A DNA stretch of 63,999 nucleotides, counting the filler, from Octopus bimaculoides (Eukaryota), in NCBI RefSeq assembly GCF_001194135.2. It is 4 parts of 4 records of this genome, joined end to end, with 100 filler letters (N's around TTAATTAATTAA, not from the genome) between each part and the next. Parts side by side here need not be neighbours in the genome. Positions count along the whole stretch, not along the records: positions 56,304 to 62,398 come from NW_026363959.1; 3 more parts are not named here. One strand, 5' to 3'. This document shows positions 21,171 through 62,398 of the stretch, one piece after another (the stretch's first letter is position 1; every line of letters begins with the position of its first letter). A program made the position numbers and the translations under genes. The notes under the pieces were generated by a model that was not told the DNA's origin, ran no database searches, and saw nothing but the letters and a program-made list of their open reading frames with translations.

Positions 21171-22149
21171 NNNNNNNNNNNNNNNNNNNNNNNNNNNNNN
21201 NNNNNNNNNNNNNNNNNNNNNNNNNNNNNNNNNNNNNNNNNNNNNNNNNNNNNNNNNNNNNNNNNNNNNNNNNNNNNNNNNNNNNNNNNNNNNNNNNNNN
21301 NNNNNNNNNNNNNNNNNNNNNNNNNNNNNNNNNNNNNNNNNNNNNNNNNNNNNNNNNNNNNNNNNNNNNNNNNNNNNNNNNNNNNNNNNNNNNNNNNNNN
21401 NNNNNNNNNNNNNNNNNNNNNNNNNNNNNNNNNNNNNNNNNNNNNNNNNNNNNNNNNNNNNNNNNNNNNNNNNNNNNNNNNNNNNNNNNNNNNNNNNNNN
21501 NNNNNNNNNNNNNNNNNNNNNNNNNNNNNNNNNNNNNNNNNNNNNNNNNNNNNNNNNNNNNNNNNNNNNNNNNNNNNNNNNNNNNNNNNNNNNNNNNNNA
21601 AATATATATATATATATATTTAAGAGAGAGAGAGACAGAGAGAAACAGAGAAGATGTATTATCTTTTTAATAAGCTACTAAAAGATTTAACCAATAAAAA
21701 AAAATGATGAAATATTTCATGAGTTTATGCTGGTATAATGGAAGGTTATATTTTATGTATTTAGATATTATTAATTCCGTTAATTAATAACTGAATTTAT
21801 GCACTCGACATGAAGCACTCAAATTACTTTATTAAAATGATAAAAGTACAATGTAAACATCACCTGAGAATACTAACCAACCCATCTAGATAAAAACAGA
21901 ATTCATCACACCAAGAGATATTTCTGGCCAAGGTTTGAGTATTCATAATCTATTGAGCACGCTGCAAGGTCTTTCATTATCGTCATGTGTAACTGATTTC
22001 AGCAAAGAAATTATGTATGGCCGTAATCCACGTGAAGGGACTATCACTAGCTTTGCACATATAAATAAAGGTTGCATAGTCAAATACATTCAAATGCTGA
22101 ACGTTTCATTGATCTTTTCCATGAGTGAGGCCGACCAGATTTGAATTTC

Positions 22150-56303: not shown

Positions 56304-57339
56304 ATGATGATGATGATGATGGTTGTGGTGGTGGTGATAATGATGAAGATAACGACGACGTATGCATCTCTGTATATATTCACACACACACACATGTAGT
56401 TCACGCTCTATCTATGCGTGAATCTGCTCTTTTTACTGCACAACATTTGATTGAACGTATGGATCTGCATATTATCGATCACAGGTACAAGAATGTTATT
56501 ATTTAATACATACAGGAAAATAAACATGGGAATATTTTCACCAAAAATAAAGAAAATTTCTATAAATGAATTTTACGTACCCACAATAATCAACTTCGAA
56601 AATTCCTGTCAAGTTTGATAATTCAAGCTCCATCTGCAATAGTTTCATACATGCATATCATATATATATATATAGGAAATTTTAAAAAAGGAAAATACAC
56701 ACACTTTACATAGTTTTAATATAATNNNNNNNNNNNNNNNNNNNNNNNNNNNNNNNNNNNNNNNNNNNNNNNNNNNNNNNNNNNNNNNNNNNNNNNNNNN
56801 NNNNTAAAAAAGGAAAATACACACACTTTACATAGTTTTAATATAATTTTTAATCTATCGACCGGTTTCGCTTTCGCTATTCATGATATTATTGTTTATT
56901 TATTTGAATATGTATTTTCTGAAGAAGAAATTTTTCTCCATGTGATACAAATGAAATTTAAATGCTGAAGCGAAACTAATGATTTCGGTGTGTTGTTCAA
57001 TGGATTACAAATATCTTCGACGCTGTAATTGTTTTTGTTTCAAGACACGATCTGAGATCAAGCCACTGCTATGCAAGTACATCTCCGTAAAAGAATGTAG
57101 TAAAGCGAAAAAGAAAAAAANNNNNNNNNNAAAAAAAGACAATCTACCTGTCTATCTGTCTCTCTGTCAATATATAATATAATGATTGAAGACATGCAGG
57201 ACTGTGTACAGTTTTTTCCTCACCTCATTAAAAAGTCATATTACTTTGAAGAAATTTTAAATGAATAATAATTATGGATTATTTTACTAATTACAGAATA
57301 AACTATACAAGAGTCTTTGTTCAATGCCCATCCCAAAAT

Positions 57340-57377
<38 letters not shown>

Positions 57378-58915
57378 NNNNNNNNNNNNNNNNNNNNNNN
57401 NNNNNNNNNNNNNNNNNNNNNNNNNNNNNNNNNNNNNNNNNNNNNNNNNNNNNNNNNNNNNNNNNNNNNNNNNNNNNNNNNNNNNNNNNNNNNNNNNNNN
57501 NNNNNNNNNNNNNNNNNNNNNNNNNNNNNNNNNNNNNNNNNNNNNNNNNNNNATACGATGAAGATATAAATATAGTTATCAATATAATAACAGAGAAGAT
57601 GTCTGTGTTGAAAGGAAGGAGGGTGAGACTAAATTTACAACTTTCAAACGCATGATTACCATACAATTGCATTTGTTTCTATGTCTTCAGCGAGACTATA
57701 GATTTCAAACAAACCTGGGAAATAAGTAAANNNNNNNNNNNNNNNNNNNNNNNNNNNNNNNNNNNNNNNNNNNNNNNNNNNNNNNNNNNNNNNNNNNNNN
57801 NNNNNNNNNNNNNNNNNNNNNNNNNNNNNNNNNNNNNNNNNNNNNNNNNNNNNNNNNNNNNNNNNNNNNNNNNNNNNNNNNNNNNNNNNNNNNNNNNNNN
57901 NNNNNNNNNNNNNNNNNNNNNNNNNNNNNNNNNNNNNNNNNNNNNNNNNNNNNNNNNNNNNNNNNNNNNNATATATGCATATATATTCAAGCAGTATATT
58001 ATACATAAATGGACATTCACATAAATACATTTGCATGCACATACACAGATATACCGCTCCACAGAATGCAAATTACTAACTCCAGTTCTCTAAACATTCT
58101 TGATTTCNNNNNNNNNNAATTACTAACTCCAGTTCTCTAAACATTCTTGATTTCTTCTGAATATACACAGATTCGCTATTGTTTTCACTGTTGTTGGTCA
58201 TGTGATGAATGCATCAGGAATGAGAACCCTATAAGATCTGAAAATCGATTAAAGCTGTTCATTCCTTTTTCAATCTACGGAAATTAAGTTGAATTTGCCA
58301 TGTTTTTTTTTTATATCTATCACGAATGTTTATATATATATATGCCTATCACTTTACCTATACACCTATATACATNNNNNNNNNNNNNNNNNNNNNNNNN
58401 NNNNNNNNNNNNNNNNNNNNNNNNNNNNNNNNNNNNNNNNNNNNNNNNNNNNNNNNNNNNNNNNNNNNNNNNNNNNNNNNNNNNNNNNNNNNNNNNNNNN
58501 NNNNNNNNNNNNNNNNNNNNNNNNNNNNNNNNNNNNNNNNNNNNNNNNNNNNNNNNNNNNNNNNNNNNNNNNNNNNNNNNNNNNNNNNNNNNNNNNNNNN
58601 NNNNNNNNNNNNNNNNNNNNNNNNNNNNNNNNNNNNNNNNNNNNNNNNNNNNNNNNNNNNNNNNNNNNNNNNNNNNNNNNNNNNNNNNNNNNNNNNNNNN
58701 NNNNNNNNNNNNNNNNNNNNNNNNNNNNNNNNNNNNNNNNNNNNNNNNNNNNNNNNNNNNNNNNNNNNNNNNNNNNNNNNNNNNNNNNNNNNNNNNNNNN
58801 NNNNNNNNNNNNNNNNNNNNNNNNNNNNNNNNNNNNNNNNNNNNNNNNNNNNNNNNNNNNNNNNNNNNTTGTAATAAATCGGGTTTAATTATATCAGAAA
58901 ATAAACAACACTGAC

Positions 58916-59099
58916 CTATGAAATCGTTCTTGTTACATAAGTTTCCGGTGCAACAAGCAACGCAAGAGGTACCACTGGTCCATTTATTGCATGTAAAGGT
59001 ATTGTTTTTCAGAGCTTCAAAACATTTTCGGTATGTGCTGCAGGATTTTTCCAAATTTAGTGTAACGCCTTTCATTGATAATTTGAGGCGACATACAGG
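58916..59099 (-). CDS. Internal coding exon: C-terminal part of a Ly6/uPAR (three-finger) domain of an extracellular protein
   Basis: Acceptor ttttattgttgcAG|, donor ATAG|GTCAGT; 184 nt, phase 0 to phase 1. Peptide PVCRLKLSMKGVTLNLEKSCSTYRKCFEALKNNTFTCNKWTSGTSCVACCTGNLCNKNDFI has 8 Cys, the CxxCCxxxxCN signature and an NNT sequon. Confidence 0.85.
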
Positions 59100-59807
59100 C
59101 TGCAACAATAAAATTATTAATGAAACTTCAAAAGATGACTGCATAAATAATCCCATGTAAAAAATTTATTCTTATTTATTATTTTCAAGTGACATATTAT
59201 AAACCTCTGCAACACTCTATTGTGTAGAAAGGAAACATTTTTTTTATATCCATTTATGAATTTTCTGCCTATATTTTCAAATCTAACGATCTCCGCTATA
59301 ATACTGCTTTGCAATCGTTCAAATAGAAAATCCTACGAGATAAGAATATCTCAAGACCATTAAAACTGTGCGTGAGAGTATGCAGAGATCCTGATCTGGT
59401 AGTTACCACTTCTAATCTTGTAATGTGAGGTCATTAAACAACGGACCTTTCTTCCAATTTGACANNNNNNNNNNNNNNNNNNNNNNNNNNNNNNNNNNNN
59501 NNNNNNNNNNNNNNNNNNNNNNNNNNNNNNNNNNNNNNNNNNNNNNNNNNNNNNNNNNNNNNNNNNNNNNNNNNNNNNNNNNNNNNNNNNNNNNNNNNNN
59601 NNNNNNNNNNCTTCATTTCACGCTGCTCCAGTCTACTCATCTGAAAATAGGATCAGCTTAATGTTGGTCATCCCTCTTTCCTTTCAAATGTACAATCCTT
59701 GTTGTTCTACTGAGTGAAAGATGAGAAGTCCGAGAGGGTGTCTATATATGCTTGCGACTATTTAGTTATCCAGAACAAACAACGAAAGCAAGCATGGTAC
59801 GAATTAC

Positions 59808-59838
59808 CTGGCCATCGTAGCTTTCAGTGACGGCGGTG
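59808..59838 (-). CDS. Possible 3' end of the preceding exon (start hidden in gap)
   Basis: ...ACC GCC GTC ACT GAA AGC TAC GAT GGC CAG|GTAATT (TAVTESYDGQ); the phase-0 donor is compatible with exon 58916-59099. Confidence 0.3.
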
Positions 59839-60231
59839 NNNNNNNNNNNNNNNNNNNNNNNNNNNNNNNNNNNNNNNNNNNNNNNNNNNNNNNNNNNNNN
59901 NNNNNNNNNNNNNNNNNNNNNNNNNNNNNNNNNNNNNNNNNNNNNNNNNNNNNNNNNNNNNNNNNNNNNNNNNNNNNNNNNNNNNNNNNNNNNNNNNNNN
60001 NNNNNNNNNNNNNNNNNNNNNNNNNNNNNNNNNNNNNNNNNNNNNNNNNNNNNNNNNNNNNNNNNNNNNNNNNNNNNNNNNNNNNNNNNNNNNNNNNNNN
60101 NNNNNNNNNNNNNNNNNNNNNNNNNNNNNNNNNNNNNNNNNNNNNNNNNNNNNNNNNNNNNNNNNNNNNNNNNNNNNNNNNNNNNNNNNNNNNNNNNNNN
60201 NNNNNNNNNNNNNNNNNNNNNNNNNNNNNNN

Positions 60232-60268
<37 letters not shown>

Positions 60269-61744
60269 GGAAATAATTACTTCGTAGTGCAAAGCAAAAG
60301 TGTGAGTGTTAGTTTGGGAACCAATACATGTGAAACATATAAACCAAATTATTAATGAAGTCTATAAGTATGTTACGATTTTGGTTTGCAATTGTTTCGG
60401 TTATGTTTCAAATTCCACTAAGAATACTAAGAACGCTATTTGTTGTCCTTGTCTCNNNNNNNNNNNNNNNNNNNNNNNNNNNNNNNNNNNNNNNNNNNNN
60501 NNAATTACTCATATAAAAGGAAATAATTGCAAAGTGGCGATTAAGCTGCTGTATATCGAACTCATAAATCTGTGAACGGCATTTAAATTTCGTAACAGCG
60601 TATTAAGCTATAATCGTTGATTTAAAGAGGCAGTCTCAATATGGTGGCTCAACCTCACTCAAATAGTAGGCACAGAGACTCTTTATTTTCAAGACAGAAA
60701 GGCCACACAATAGCATGTAACCGTCGAAAATCTCAGTCGAATACCGAATAGACACAGCTGGAAGGTCTATGATACCTGAACTGCACAAAGCTCATTTGAA
60801 TGAACAACAGAAAACAATGTTACTTATATGGTCTTATTTCANNNNNNNNNNNNNNNNNNNNNNNNNNNNNNNNNNNNNNNNNNNNNNNNNNNNNNNNNNN
60901 NNNNNNNNNNNNNNNNNNNNNNNNNNNNNNNNNNNNNNNNNNNNNNNNNNNNNNNNNNNNNNNNNNNNNNNNNNNNNNNNNNNNNNNNNNNNNNNNNNNN
61001 NNNNNNNNNNNNNNNNNNNNNNNNNNNNNNNNNNNNNNNNNNNNNNNNNNNNNNNNNNNNNNNNNNNNNNNNNNNNNNNNNNNNNNNNNNNNNNNNNNNN
61101 NNNNNNNNNNNNNNNNNNNNNNNNNNNNNNNNNNNNNNNNNNNNNNNNNNNNNNNNNNNNNNNNNNNNNNNNNNNNNNNNNNNNNNNNNNNNNNNNNNNN
61201 NNNNNNNNNNNNNNNNNNNNNNNNNNNNNNNNNNNNNNNNNNNNNNNNNNNNNNNNNNNNNNNNNNNNNNNNNNNNNNNNNNNNNNNNNNNNNNNNNNNN
61301 NNNNNNNNNNNNNNNNNNNNNNNNNNNNNNNNNNNNNNNNNNNNNNNNNNNNNNNNNNNNNNNNNNNNNNNNNNNNNNNNNNNNNNNNNNNNNNNNNNNN
61401 NNNNNNNNNNNNNNNNNNNNNNNNNNNNNNNNNNNNNNNNNNNNNNNNNNNNNNNNNNNNNNNNNNNNNNNNNNNNNNNNNNNNNNNNNNNNNNNNNNNN
61501 NNNNNNNNNNNNNNNNNNNNNNNNNNNNNNNNNNNNNNNNNNNNNNNNNNNNNNNNNNNNNNNNNNNNNNNNNNNNNNNNNNNNNNNNNNNNNNNNNNNN
61601 NNNNNNNNNNNNNNNNNNNNNNNNNNNNNNNNNNNNNNNNNNNNNNNNNNNNNNNNNNNNNNNNNNNNNNNNNNNNTCCGTCATCAGGGATGGAAAGATA
61701 TTACATCTAAGAACTTAATACAGAGACACACTCACACACACAAG

Positions 61745-62100
61745 CATGTCCTCAGCATCTCGTCCCGAACTTGGATCCAGTATCTGCTCCAGCTTTCACT
61801 GACACATCAGCCCTTTCCTTTTCACCGCCACCAATCTCCCAGCACCTTCTGCGTTTGGGTCTTATACCAACTCCCTATGAACACAGTAACGAGTCCATCC
61901 ACATCGATTATACTGCCCGCCGACTGCCCCATAGCTTCGCAGTGCACCTTAGAGCCATCCGACTCTCCCAAATACTCTAACACCTTTCTGTCCTCGACTT
62001 GGCCTTCAACACCGGTTTTGCCACCTCGTATTTCTAAAGCGAACGGAAGTTCGTTTTCCTTCTCAAAACCTACACACCTATTGATTTAAATTCTCACCCT
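61745..62100 (+). mobile_element. Penelope-like element, decayed GIY-YIG endonuclease region
   Basis: GSSICSS...PFL (CxxC remnant), ESIHIDYTARRLPHSFAVHLRAIRL (cf. YIGxTxRRL..RF.EH), and C-terminal ERKFVFLLKTYTPIDLNS (cf. RE..I..L.T..P.GLN). Confidence 0.7.
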
Positions 62101-62398
62101 CTCATTTTCTAATCTGCATTCCAAATCCCTATCACTAGCTCCACAATTNNNNNNNNNNNNNNNNNNNNNNNNNNNNNNNNNNNATTTCACCAATTTTAAT
62201 TCGTTAATTGATTAGCATGTTAGTCAATTAACTAATTGATATCTTCATTCTTCGTTCAGTTCATGAATCAATCAGTCATGGTCCTTTCGTCAACGACGCA
62301 ACCTCTTCAATCACATCGCATCTCTACTTCAAATGAGATTTAAGTCTGTCTGTCTCTCAATTTTTTTAATTATATATTTATAAAGTTATGTGAGCGGG

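What the first reader, a model, noticed from the sequence alone, without database searches (positions are those of the whole stretch)
58916..59099. Ly6/three-finger domain exon that appears to be one module of a larger extracellular protein
Seen: clean splice sites, an open frame, 8 Cys spaced C-x16-C-x5-C-x10-C-x8-C-x2-CC-x4-CN, and a phase-1 intron five residues after CN. Established: CC-x4-CN ends Ly6/uPAR three-finger domains, whose invertebrate members (e.g. Drosophila quiver/sleepless) modulate ion channels and receptors. Classical Ly6 proteins follow CN with a hydrophobic GPI signal, and phase-1 introns typically border shuffled extracellular modules. Inference: no GPI tail follows in this exon, so the domain may sit inside a mosaic protein. 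My unverified hypothesis is a cephalopod adhesion-GPCR-like receptor with a Ly6 module in its ectodomain; a multi-exon GPI-anchored or secreted Ly6 is the alternative. The rest of the gene probably lies in gaps or on another scaffold.
Basis: partly seen in the sequence, partly recalled or inferred. Interest (0 to 1): 0.75.

Follow-up and report, generated by a model that had tools for sequence, protein, structure and literature searches.

The report
Three-finger exon of octopus adhesion receptor

Summary
Window 59099..58916 on the minus strand is a 184-nt exon (acceptor ttgcag|, donor G|gtcagt; phase 0 in, phase 1 out) with exactly the reported cysteine spacing.

- **It is half a domain.** It carries Cys5-12 of a 12-Cys LU (Ly6/uPAR three-finger) module. 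In relatives a 92-nt upstream exon (…YSLFQRNLQCQTCS…) carries Cys1-4. Together the two exons form a module flanked by phase-1 introns.
- **Homologues.** A whole-library HMMER search found 23 homologues, and every one that carries a name is from Octopus. The full-length ones read signal peptide, LRR, LRRCT, LU, a ferredoxin-like module, HormR, GAIN/GPS, 7TM. Their best matches among solved structures are ADGRG2 and ADGRG6.
- **Domain type.** By sequence profile and by predicted fold, the closest solved LU domain is human Lynx2/LYPD1, which has the same Cys spacing.
- **Locus.** The piece is colinear, introns included, with an O. sinensis contig carrying XP_036354932.1 (82% identical over the exon; dN/dS about 0.3). 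A second exon of the same gene lies at 56633..56581. The two neighbouring exons fall in N gaps.
- **Limit.** GAIN and 7TM lie outside the piece and are not shown for this gene.
- **Novelty.** New member of a known kind. LU-bearing ADGRG2/G6-like receptors were noted in starfish in 2024. The 2019 paper on the octopus expansion did not list the LU domain.

The parts
58916..59099 (-). LU (Ly6/uPAR three-finger) exon 2 of 2: 184 nt, phase 0 in and phase 1 out. It encodes Cys5-12 (fingers II-III and the CC-x4-CN end) of a 12-Cys Lynx2/LYPD1-type domain.
   Evidence: Sequence and frame. 23 homologues at 36-82% identity (all but two at 55% or more). Splice sites conserved in O. sinensis. dN/dS 0.28. 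hhalign gives a gap-free 59-column match to LYPD1 over exactly this region.
59100..59113 (-). 3' splice site: pyrimidine/T-rich tract and AG (tttattgttgcag).
   Evidence: O. sinensis has tttatcgttacag at the same place.
58910..58915 (-). 5' splice site gtcagt (phase 1).
   Evidence: gtaagt in O. sinensis. Several gene models in the databases read through this intron, giving GKCYLLS… or GKCCLFSDII…, which is homologous to the window's GQCCLFSDII.
56581..56633 (-). Middle exon (53 nt, phase 0 in and phase 2 out) of the three-exon ferredoxin-like (SEA-position) module that follows LU. It encodes MELELSNLTGIFEVDYCG.
   Evidence: tblastn hits to about 15 homologues, all at the colinear position. 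ttgcag|ATG…GG|gtacgt. Aligned with O. sinensis exon L001 29896-29948. dN/dS 0.38.
59839..60231 (-). N gap in which LU exon 1 is expected (92 nt, (N)YSLFQRNLQCQTCS…AE, Cys1-4). Inferred, not seen.
   Evidence: Colinear anchors: window 60233-60454 matches L001 19872-19651 and window 59611-59776 matches L001 22572-22407. These bracket L001 exon 21605-21703. No trace of this exon in the sequenced blocks.
57378..57552 (-). N gap in which the first exon of the post-LU module is expected (G-x-x-N-S-F-V-F-H-L-I-F…ISRA). Inferred, not seen.
   Evidence: Anchor window 57553-57589 matches L001 29070-29034. The L001 exon starts at about 29131, i.e. about 60 nt further on.
56304..62398 (-). Whole piece: an internal segment of one gene, running from the intron after the LRRCT exon to the intron after the middle exon of the post-LU module. 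It is colinear in reverse with O. sinensis contig VCDQ01005240.1 from 17.3 to 30.2 kb.
   Evidence: Seven colinear blastn blocks at 75-92% identity, intronic DNA included.

Best explanation
The exon is the 3' half of a two-exon LU (Ly6/uPAR, three-finger) module of the 12-cysteine Lynx2/LYPD1 type. The module lies in the extracellular region of a member of the octopus-expanded, ADGRG2/G6-like adhesion-GPCR family.

The family architecture is: signal peptide, LRRNT, n LRRs (one 72-nt exon each), LRRCT, LU, a ferredoxin-like beta-alpha-beta-beta-alpha-beta module at the place where ADGRG6 has its SEA domain, HormR, GAIN with a canonical HL|T GPS, 7TM.

Shown:
- The exon is real and under purifying selection.
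- It is three-finger in type.
- It is joined in one gene to LRR/LRRCT upstream (in the O. sinensis counterpart) and to the next module downstream (in this window).
- LU, the post-LU module and HormR are each flanked by phase-1 introns. This explains the in-frame tandem LU duplications and the module-skipping variants among paralogues.

Inferred:
- This particular gene continues into GAIN/7TM.
- The LU domain acts as a disulfide-rigid protein-binding module that, together with the LRR arc, captures an extracellular or cell-surface partner.
- Binding or mechanical pull is relayed through GAIN to expose the tethered agonist (TSFALLMDV…) and activate the 7TM, as in other adhesion GPCRs.
For: - Exon anatomy.
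- Homologues: one search gives 23 hits. Every hit that carries a name is from Octopus. Pfam finds LRR_8 + GPS + 7tm_2, plus weak HRM, in full-length ones.
- Best solved-structure sequence matches of P0018 over HormR-GAIN-7TM: ADGRG2 at 2e-68 and ADGRG6 at 2e-65.
- Three-finger type, by sequence: the profile of the two-exon module against PDB sequences puts LYPD1 6zss first (E 0.0014, whole domain) with identical Cys spacing in the second half. hhalign gives 84% probability, E 7e-6.
- Three-finger type, by fold: the AF2 model (pLDDT 70) searched with Foldseek returns only three-finger folds in the top 50, with Lynx2 first, then LYPD6 and LYPD6B.
- Second colinear exon in the window.
- Intron-inclusive colinearity with the O. 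sinensis gene of XP_036354932.1, which has LRR and LRRCT exons upstream.
- Exon phases.
- dN/dS 0.28-0.30.
- More than 50 Octopus proteins carry the LU signature, at least 17 of them with GPS as well, and none is signal-LU-GPI.
- In-frame tandem LU-LU in P0046, P0001, P0024 and P0059.
Against: - GAIN/GPS/7TM are not in the piece. The O. sinensis contig also ends after the first HormR exon. A truncated or 7TM-less product of this gene therefore cannot be excluded. Several family gene models lack a 7TM.
- Pfam's own LU models do not reach their thresholds: UPAR_LY6_2 scores 15.3 bits against a cutoff of 31.5, and Activin_recp scores similarly.
- The AF2 model is of moderate confidence and the Foldseek E-values are modest (1.5e-2).
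- The SEA identity of the next module is not established. Foldseek returns only generic ferredoxin-like folds, and there is no PDB sequence hit.
- No expression data or binding partner is available, so the ligand-binding role is inference from the LU and adhesion-GPCR literature.
Confidence: 0.85

Rival explanations
1. The exon belongs to a 7TM-less product: a secreted or otherwise truncated LRR-LU-(ferredoxin-like)-HormR protein, or a partial tandem duplicate of a receptor gene that no longer reaches GAIN/7TM.
For: - The closest relative P0002 and the related P0050 both end by read-through right after the first HormR exon (…ATRYWFVSIVLFH).
- Many family models lack a 7TM or join the ectodomain straight to the last tail exon (…SSSTGNGTEDRTAETNF).
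- P0023 ends right after LU.
- No GAIN exon is found in the remaining 4 kb of the O. sinensis contig.
Against: - Octopus introns are 2-5 kb, so 4 kb without an exon says little.
- P0002 is flagged partial and its contig simply ends.
- At least 17 paralogues with the same ectodomain do have GPS + 7TM.
- Purifying selection (dN/dS 0.3) fits either reading.
Confidence: 0.12
2. It is an exon of a small free-standing Ly6 protein, multi-exon and either GPI-anchored or secreted.
For: - NCBI named one 151-aa model (P0007) 'ly6/PLAUR domain-containing protein 1-like'.
- The canonical Ly6 gene also has a two-exon LU domain flanked by phase-1 introns (PMC6600238).
Against: - P0007 and the other short models start inside the LRRCT exon (MMCGCHLPA…) and end by intron read-through, so they are fragments.
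- The window has the next mosaic module's exon downstream on the same strand.
- The piece is colinear with an LRR-containing gene.
- No homologue has a signal peptide directly before LU or a hydrophobic GPI tail after it.
Confidence: 0.02
3. It is the cysteine-box exon of a TGF-beta/activin-type serine/threonine-kinase receptor ectodomain. That domain is also a three-finger fold ending in CC-x4-CN.
For: - Pfam Activin_recp is nominally the best hit to the exon alone (E 0.015).
- ACVR1 is the best single-sequence PDB hit (E 0.005).
- TGF-beta receptor ectodomains appear among the Foldseek hits.
Against: - With the full two-exon profile, LYPD1 beats ACVR1 by E 0.0014 to 0.38 and aligns all 12 Cys.
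- No homologue has a kinase domain. They have LRR, GPS and 7tm_2 instead.
Confidence: 0.01

Closest known systems
Human Lynx2/LYPD1 (PDB 6zss), then the LYPD6/LYPD6B LU domains
   Same: - 12 cysteines. The second half has the identical spacing C-x16-C-x5-C-x10-C-x8-C-x2-CC-x4-CN.
- Best sequence-profile match and best fold match.
- The LU domain is encoded by two exons flanked by phase-1 introns (PMC6600238).
   Different: - About 20-24% sequence identity.
- LYPD1 is a free-standing GPI-anchored protein that modulates nicotinic receptors.
- Here the domain is an internal module between LRRCT and further ectodomain modules, with no signal peptide or GPI signal of its own.
Starfish (Asterias rubens) LU-bearing adhesion GPCRs: LyAr2 = XP_033635706.1 (ADGRG2-like, 1113 aa, LU at 224-305) and XP_033635539.1 (ADGRG6-like, 1022 aa, LU at 186-244); PMC11595613
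   Same: - One LU domain in the N-terminal ectodomain of an ADGRG2/G6-like 7TM receptor, at a similar distance from the N-terminus.
- The LU domain is reported there as closest to human Lynx2.
   Different: - A different phylum.
- I could not obtain the starfish sequences, so common origin, the presence of LRRs and intron positions are untested.
- The 61-aa HMMER search did not reach them.
Vertebrate ADGRG6 (GPR126) and ADGRG2
   Same: - Best matches over HormR-GAIN-7TM.
- Canonical GPS (…CSCNHL|TSFA…) and 7tm_2.
- ADGRG6 also has a domain (SEA) directly before HormR.
   Different: - ADGRG6 has CUB-PTX at its N-terminus where the octopus family has LRR-LRRCT-LU.
- The pre-HormR module here could not be shown to be SEA.
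ADGRA2/3 (GPR124/125) and the octopus-specific 'group 3' adhesion-GPCR expansion of Ritschard et al. 2019 (PMC6408891)
   Same: - LRR + LRRCT + HormR + GAIN + 7TM layout.
- Group 3 is very probably this family. That paper reports LRRs in some members and one O. bimaculoides member with a Death domain, which fits P0021.
   Different: - ADGRA receptors have an Ig domain after LRRCT where these have LU.
- The 2019 paper lists GPS, 7TM, LRR and Death, but not the LU domain.

Membership tests
Ly6/uPAR (LU, three-finger) domain superfamily | Consensus cysteine framework ending in CC-x4-5-CN, with an N-terminal C-x2-C | tested here: met
   The exon has 8 Cys ending in CC-x4-CN. The C-x2-C…C…C half sits on the preceding exon in all relatives, giving 12 Cys with 7 columns invariant and the rest in at least 90% of sequences. 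That half lies in a gap in this window.
Ly6/uPAR (LU, three-finger) domain superfamily | Three-finger beta fold | tested here: met
   AF2 model of the closest relative's module: pLDDT 69.7, mainly beta strands with one short helix. The Foldseek top 50 are all three-finger folds, with Lynx2 first at TM 0.57-0.59 and probability 1.0. Confidence is moderate. The model is of the O. sinensis sequence, not the window's own.
Ly6/uPAR (LU, three-finger) domain superfamily | Significant match to a curated LU family model | tested here: inconclusive
   Pfam UPAR_LY6_2 scores 15.3 bits (cutoff 31.5) and Toxin_TOLIP and Activin_recp are also below threshold. However, the family profile against LYPD1 gives E 0.0014 and hhalign gives 84% probability, E 7e-6.
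Ly6/uPAR (LU, three-finger) domain superfamily | Domain encoded by two exons flanked by phase-1 introns (PMC6600238) | tested here: met
   Window exon: phase 0 in, phase 1 out. O. sinensis exon 1: phase 1 in, phase 0 out, 92 + 184 = 276 nt.
Classical Ly6 proteins (free-standing, GPI-anchored or secreted) | A signal peptide directly before LU, and a GPI signal or stop directly after it | tested here: not met
   LRR/LRRCT lie upstream and further modules downstream in all informative homologues and in the colinear O. sinensis gene. A downstream mosaic exon is present in the window.
Adhesion GPCR (class B2), ADGRG2/G6-like | GAIN domain with GPS motif immediately before a secretin-type 7TM | not testable with these tools
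   For this gene, those exons lie outside the 6-kb piece and beyond the end of the O. sinensis contig. For the family the feature is met: GPS at 1e-13 and 7tm_2 at up to 1e-41 in P0018, P0020, P0021 and P0022, with best PDB matches ADGRG2 and ADGRG6.
Adhesion GPCR (class B2), ADGRG2/G6-like | The same gene as an LRR-LU ectodomain of the family type | tested here: met
   Intron-inclusive colinearity with the O. sinensis gene, whose exons encode LRRs, LRRCT, LU, the post-LU module and HormR in that order.
TGF-beta/activin receptor family | A three-finger ectodomain followed by a single TM and a Ser/Thr kinase | tested here: not met
   No homologue has a kinase domain. The full-module profile prefers LYPD1 to ACVR1.
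SEA domain (for the module that includes exon 56633..56581) | Ferredoxin-like alpha/beta sandwich, specific similarity to SEA domains, and a G|S[VI]VV autoproteolysis motif | tested here: inconclusive
   The AF2 model (pLDDT 90) has beta-alpha-beta-beta-alpha-beta topology. Foldseek returns only generic ferredoxin-like folds and no SEA in the top 50. There is no PDB sequence hit and no GSVVV motif. Only the position before HormR parallels ADGRG6.

The most novel reading that the evidence does not exclude
An LU (Lynx2-type) domain in the ectodomain is an ancient feature of ADGRG2/G6-type adhesion GPCRs, shared by molluscs and echinoderms and lost in vertebrates. Under this reading it acts as a covalently tethered three-finger cis-ligand or modulator, doing in one polypeptide what free Ly6 proteins such as Lynx or Drosophila Bero do to receptors in cis. 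That would make LU a true mobile exon-shuffling module, rather than the 'proto-module' it is currently held to be.
Probability: 0.2. Interest if true: 0.6.

Novelty: new member of a known kind. Interest (0 to 1): 0.4.

Why it matters
- **Correct identity of an unannotated domain.** The LU domain is missed by Pfam thresholds. The affected proteins are therefore labelled 'ADGRG6-like', 'slit-like', 'toll-like receptor 5' or 'LYPD1-like', and the LU domain is absent from the published description of the octopus adhesion-GPCR expansion. [quoted passage not shown]
- **LU as a mobile module.** The locus is a clean case of an LU domain behaving as a phase 1-1 exon-shuffling module inside a mosaic receptor, with in-frame tandem duplication. 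A recent review held this to be rare.
- **Possible deep origin.** Together with the starfish LU-bearing ADGRG-like receptors, it raises a testable question: is LU + ADGRG an old bilaterian architecture?
- **Experimental handle.** The LRR-LU head is a defined fragment for finding what these expanded receptors bind.

Tried and rejected
- The word-indexed homologue search with the 61-aa peptide found nothing. With the LU-module alignment it found only 4 short models. With full-length receptors it returned about 30 Octopus proteins, and the other hits were LRR proteins or LU-less adhesion GPCRs. No starfish or other invertebrate LU-bearing receptor appeared, so common origin with the starfish receptors could not be tested.
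- Pfam on the exon, and on each of the 18 module sequences, gave only sub-threshold hits split between Activin_recp, UPAR_LY6_2 and Toxin_TOLIP. A weak prothrombin Gla-region hit is composition noise.
- tblastn of all homologues against the piece found no LU exon 1, no first exon of the post-LU module and no LRR, HormR, GAIN or 7TM exon in the sequenced blocks.
- The SEA hypothesis for the next module could not be confirmed.
- I looked for GAIN exons in the last 4 kb of the O. sinensis contig and found none.
- No protein identical to the window's exon is in the libraries. The source species therefore stays undetermined, beyond being an octopod with dS of about 0.34 to O. sinensis.
- There are no tRNA genes in the piece. 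The long ORFs of the GC-richer block 61677-62148 have no significant Pfam match.
- The library search turned up no paper linking octopus to Ly6/LYPD.

Full report
**1. The observation**

The claimed exon is on the minus strand. The reverse complement of 58916..59099 has a single open frame, PVCRLKLSMKGVTLNLEKSCSTYRKCFEALKNNTFTCNKWTSGTSCVACCTGNLCNKNDFI, followed by one extra base. The other five frames are closed. The acceptor is tattgttgcag|CCT and the donor is ATAG|gtcagt. The Cys spacing is exactly C-x16-C-x5-C-x10-C-x8-C-x2-CC-x4-CN, and the intron after KNDFI is phase 1. The stop-to-stop frame around the exon (99 codons) is the longest in the AT-rich part of the piece. The piece (56304-62398) is about 40% N, in 11 gaps.

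**2. Is it real?**

- The exon alone gives only weak family hits: Pfam Activin_recp at E 0.015 and UPAR_LY6_2 at E 0.024, and ACVR1 in the PDB at E 0.005. All of these are three-finger folds.
- The word-indexed homologue search found nothing.
- An exhaustive HMMER scan of 1.84 billion representative proteins found 23 hits, 20 of them at E<=1e-10. All but the two weakest are 55-82% identical, and they range from 151 to 1283 aa.
- Every hit that carries a name is from Octopus bimaculoides, O. vulgaris or O. sinensis. Names include 'adhesion G-protein coupled receptor G6', 'GPR126-like', 'ADGRA3', 'slit homolog 1-like, partial' and 'ly6/PLAUR domain-containing protein 1-like'.

**3. The domain is split over two exons**

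- In every homologue with sequence upstream, PVC is preceded by (N/D)YSLFQRNLQCQTCSGMMCNDSEVTSCPGAE, which adds four cysteines.
- The complete module has 12 Cys. Seven columns are invariant and the others are kept in at least 90% of sequences.
- On the O. sinensis contig L001 (VCDQ01005240.1, the gene of XP_036354932.1 = P0002) this upstream part is a separate 92-nt exon that enters in phase 1 and leaves in phase 0. The window-type exon enters in phase 0 and leaves in phase 1.
- The LU module is therefore a two-exon unit with symmetric phase-1 boundaries. This is the canonical LU gene structure described in PMC6600238.

**4. Three-finger type**

- A profile of the two-exon module against all PDB sequences puts human LYPD1/Lynx2 (6zss) first, at E 0.0014 over the whole domain. 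ACVR1 follows at 0.38 and LYPD6 at about 1.
- The second half of LYPD1 has exactly the window's Cys spacing.
- hhalign of the profile against LYPD1 gives 84% probability, E 7e-6, with a gap-free 59-column alignment covering the window's exon.
- An AF2 model of the closest relative's module (pLDDT 69.7, mainly beta strands with one short helix) retrieves only three-finger folds in the Foldseek top 50. The order is Lynx2 (TM 0.57/0.59, probability 1.0), LYPD6, LYPD6B, candoxin, then TGF-beta receptor ectodomains.
- Pfam's curated LU thresholds are not reached. That explains why the domain is unannotated in these proteins.

**5. What protein it sits in**

- Pfam on the long homologues gives LRR_8/LRR_4, weak HRM, GPS (E about 1e-13) and 7tm_2 (up to E 1e-41). 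P0021 also has a C-terminal Death domain.
- Against solved structures, P0018 matches ADGRG2 (2e-68) and ADGRG6 (2e-65) best over HormR-GAIN-7TM.
- The GPS reads …CSCNHLTSFALLMDV…, which is a canonical HL|T site with a tethered-agonist-like sequence.
- A wider retrieval gave more than 50 Octopus proteins with the LU Cys signature. At least 17 of them also have a GPS. None has a signal-LU-GPI layout.
- The short 'Ly6-like' models begin inside the LRRCT exon and end by intron read-through.
- This family is very probably the octopus-specific 'group 3' adhesion-GPCR expansion of Ritschard et al. 2019 (PMC6408891). That paper lists GPS, 7TM, LRR and one Death domain, but no LU domain.

**6. This locus**

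- tblastn of the homologues against the piece finds a second exon on the same strand, at 56633..56581. It reads ttgcag|ATGGAG…TGTGG|gtacgt and encodes MELELSNLTGIFEVDYCG. It is the middle of the three exons of the module that follows LU.
- The piece is colinear in reverse with L001 from 17.3 to 30.2 kb, in seven blocks at 75-92% identity that include intronic DNA. It is therefore the ortholog or a very close paralog of the O. sinensis gene, whose upstream exons encode LRRs and LRRCT.
- The anchors place LU exon 1 in gap 59839-60231 and the first post-LU exon in gap 57378-57552.
- Splice sites of both window exons are conserved.
- dN/dS is 0.28 for the LU exon and 0.30 for both exons, at dS 0.34. 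Substitutions cluster in the first half of the exon. The last 30 or so residues are almost unchanged.
- GAIN and 7TM are not visible for this gene. The piece ends, and the O. sinensis contig ends after the first HormR exon.

**7. The neighbouring module**

- An AF2 model of the post-LU module is confident (pLDDT 90) and has beta-alpha-beta-beta-alpha-beta topology.
- Foldseek returns only generic ferredoxin-like folds, and there is no PDB sequence hit.
- It occupies the place of the SEA domain of ADGRG6, but SEA membership is not shown.
- It too is flanked by phase-1 introns, and the HormR exon that follows it starts in phase 1.
- This fits paralogues or isoforms that skip modules in frame (P0006, P0008-P0010) and those that duplicate LU in tandem (P0046, P0001, P0024, P0059).

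**8. How it most likely works**

- Shown: this is an extracellular, disulfide-rich three-finger module between an LRR arc and the HormR-GAIN stalk of an adhesion GPCR family.
- Inferred, from established knowledge of LU domains as protein binders and of adhesion-GPCR activation by tethered agonists: LRR + LU form the ligand-capturing head, and engagement or force is transmitted to GAIN/7TM.
- Free LU proteins are known to act in cis on receptors, including GPCRs. An example is Drosophila Bero acting on AstC-R2 (bioRxiv 10.64898/2026.06.29.735401). A built-in cis-modulator role is therefore conceivable, but untested.

**9. Comparison and novelty**

- LU domains are said to occur mostly alone or in LU-only repeats, and to be only 'proto-modules' (PMC6600238).
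- A 2024 survey of starfish three-finger proteins lists two ADGRG2/G6-like 7TM receptors with one N-terminal LU domain. It reports that LU domain to be closest to human Lynx2 (PMC11595613 and its Table S1).
- The octopus case is thus a new member of a known, little-noticed kind, and the proteins are already in the databases under other names.
- The library search turned up no paper describing an LU domain in a cephalopod receptor.

**10. Verdict**

Interest is moderate.

Noticed in passing
window 61677-62148: This block has markedly higher G+C (37-40%, against 14-28% elsewhere) and a strong C-over-G skew on the + strand. It holds long ORFs on both strands (136 aa on +, 87 aa on -) with no significant Pfam match. 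It has no counterpart in the colinear O. sinensis intron. It is probably a lineage-specific repeat insertion.
   Followed up: partly
window 60232-60268; also 56304-56350 and 57343-57377: The piece contains microsatellites: (AAT)n, (ATG)n and (AT)n. The (AAT)n tract corresponds to a region of about 3 kb of AAT-rich repeats in the O. sinensis intron (L001 about 18.5-21.5 kb). The window spans about 6 kb where O. sinensis has about 13 kb, so the scaffold gaps are probably undersized.
   Followed up: partly
P0021 (O. bimaculoides XP_014788728.1), residues 1203-1277: This LU-bearing adhesion GPCR has a Death domain at its cytoplasmic C-terminus (Pfam E 3e-6). It fits the single Death-domain member mentioned by Ritschard et al. 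2019.
   Followed up: partly
P0046, P0059 (O. sinensis); P0001, P0024 (O. vulgaris): These gene models have two LU modules in tandem (…CNKNDFI-D-YSLFQRNLQCQTC…), as expected for duplication of a phase 1-1 two-exon unit.
   Followed up: partly
P0014, P0048, P0051, P0055, P0057-P0060 (O. vulgaris / O. sinensis): Several models run LRR, LU, post-LU module, HormR and a second post-LU-type module, then jump straight to the short tail …SSSTGNGTEDRTAETNF. That tail resembles the last residues of the full-length receptors' cytoplasmic tails. These are either 7TM-less isoforms or annotation artefacts.
   Followed up: no
P0002 (O. sinensis) and P0050 (source unnamed); L001 33265-33303: Two independent gene models end with the same intron read-through, …ATRYWFVSIVLFH, after the first HormR exon. 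The intron start is therefore conserved, or a truncated isoform is real.
   Followed up: no
L001 616-12249: In the O. sinensis gene each 24-residue leucine-rich repeat is encoded by its own 72-nt exon, and these exons are separated by introns of about 1-4 kb. That layout makes it easy to change the repeat number, and paralogues do differ widely in LRR count.
   Followed up: partly
P0067 (O. vulgaris, 477 aa): This model fuses the post-LU and HormR modules to ankyrin repeats. It is probably a chimeric gene prediction.
   Followed up: no
P0020, P0028, P0029 (Logan transcript assemblies) and P0019 (ENA): These are the most divergent full-length LU-bearing receptors found (55% identity over the exon), and they come from unnamed samples. 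They may come from a non-Octopus cephalopod, which would widen the family's range.
   Followed up: no
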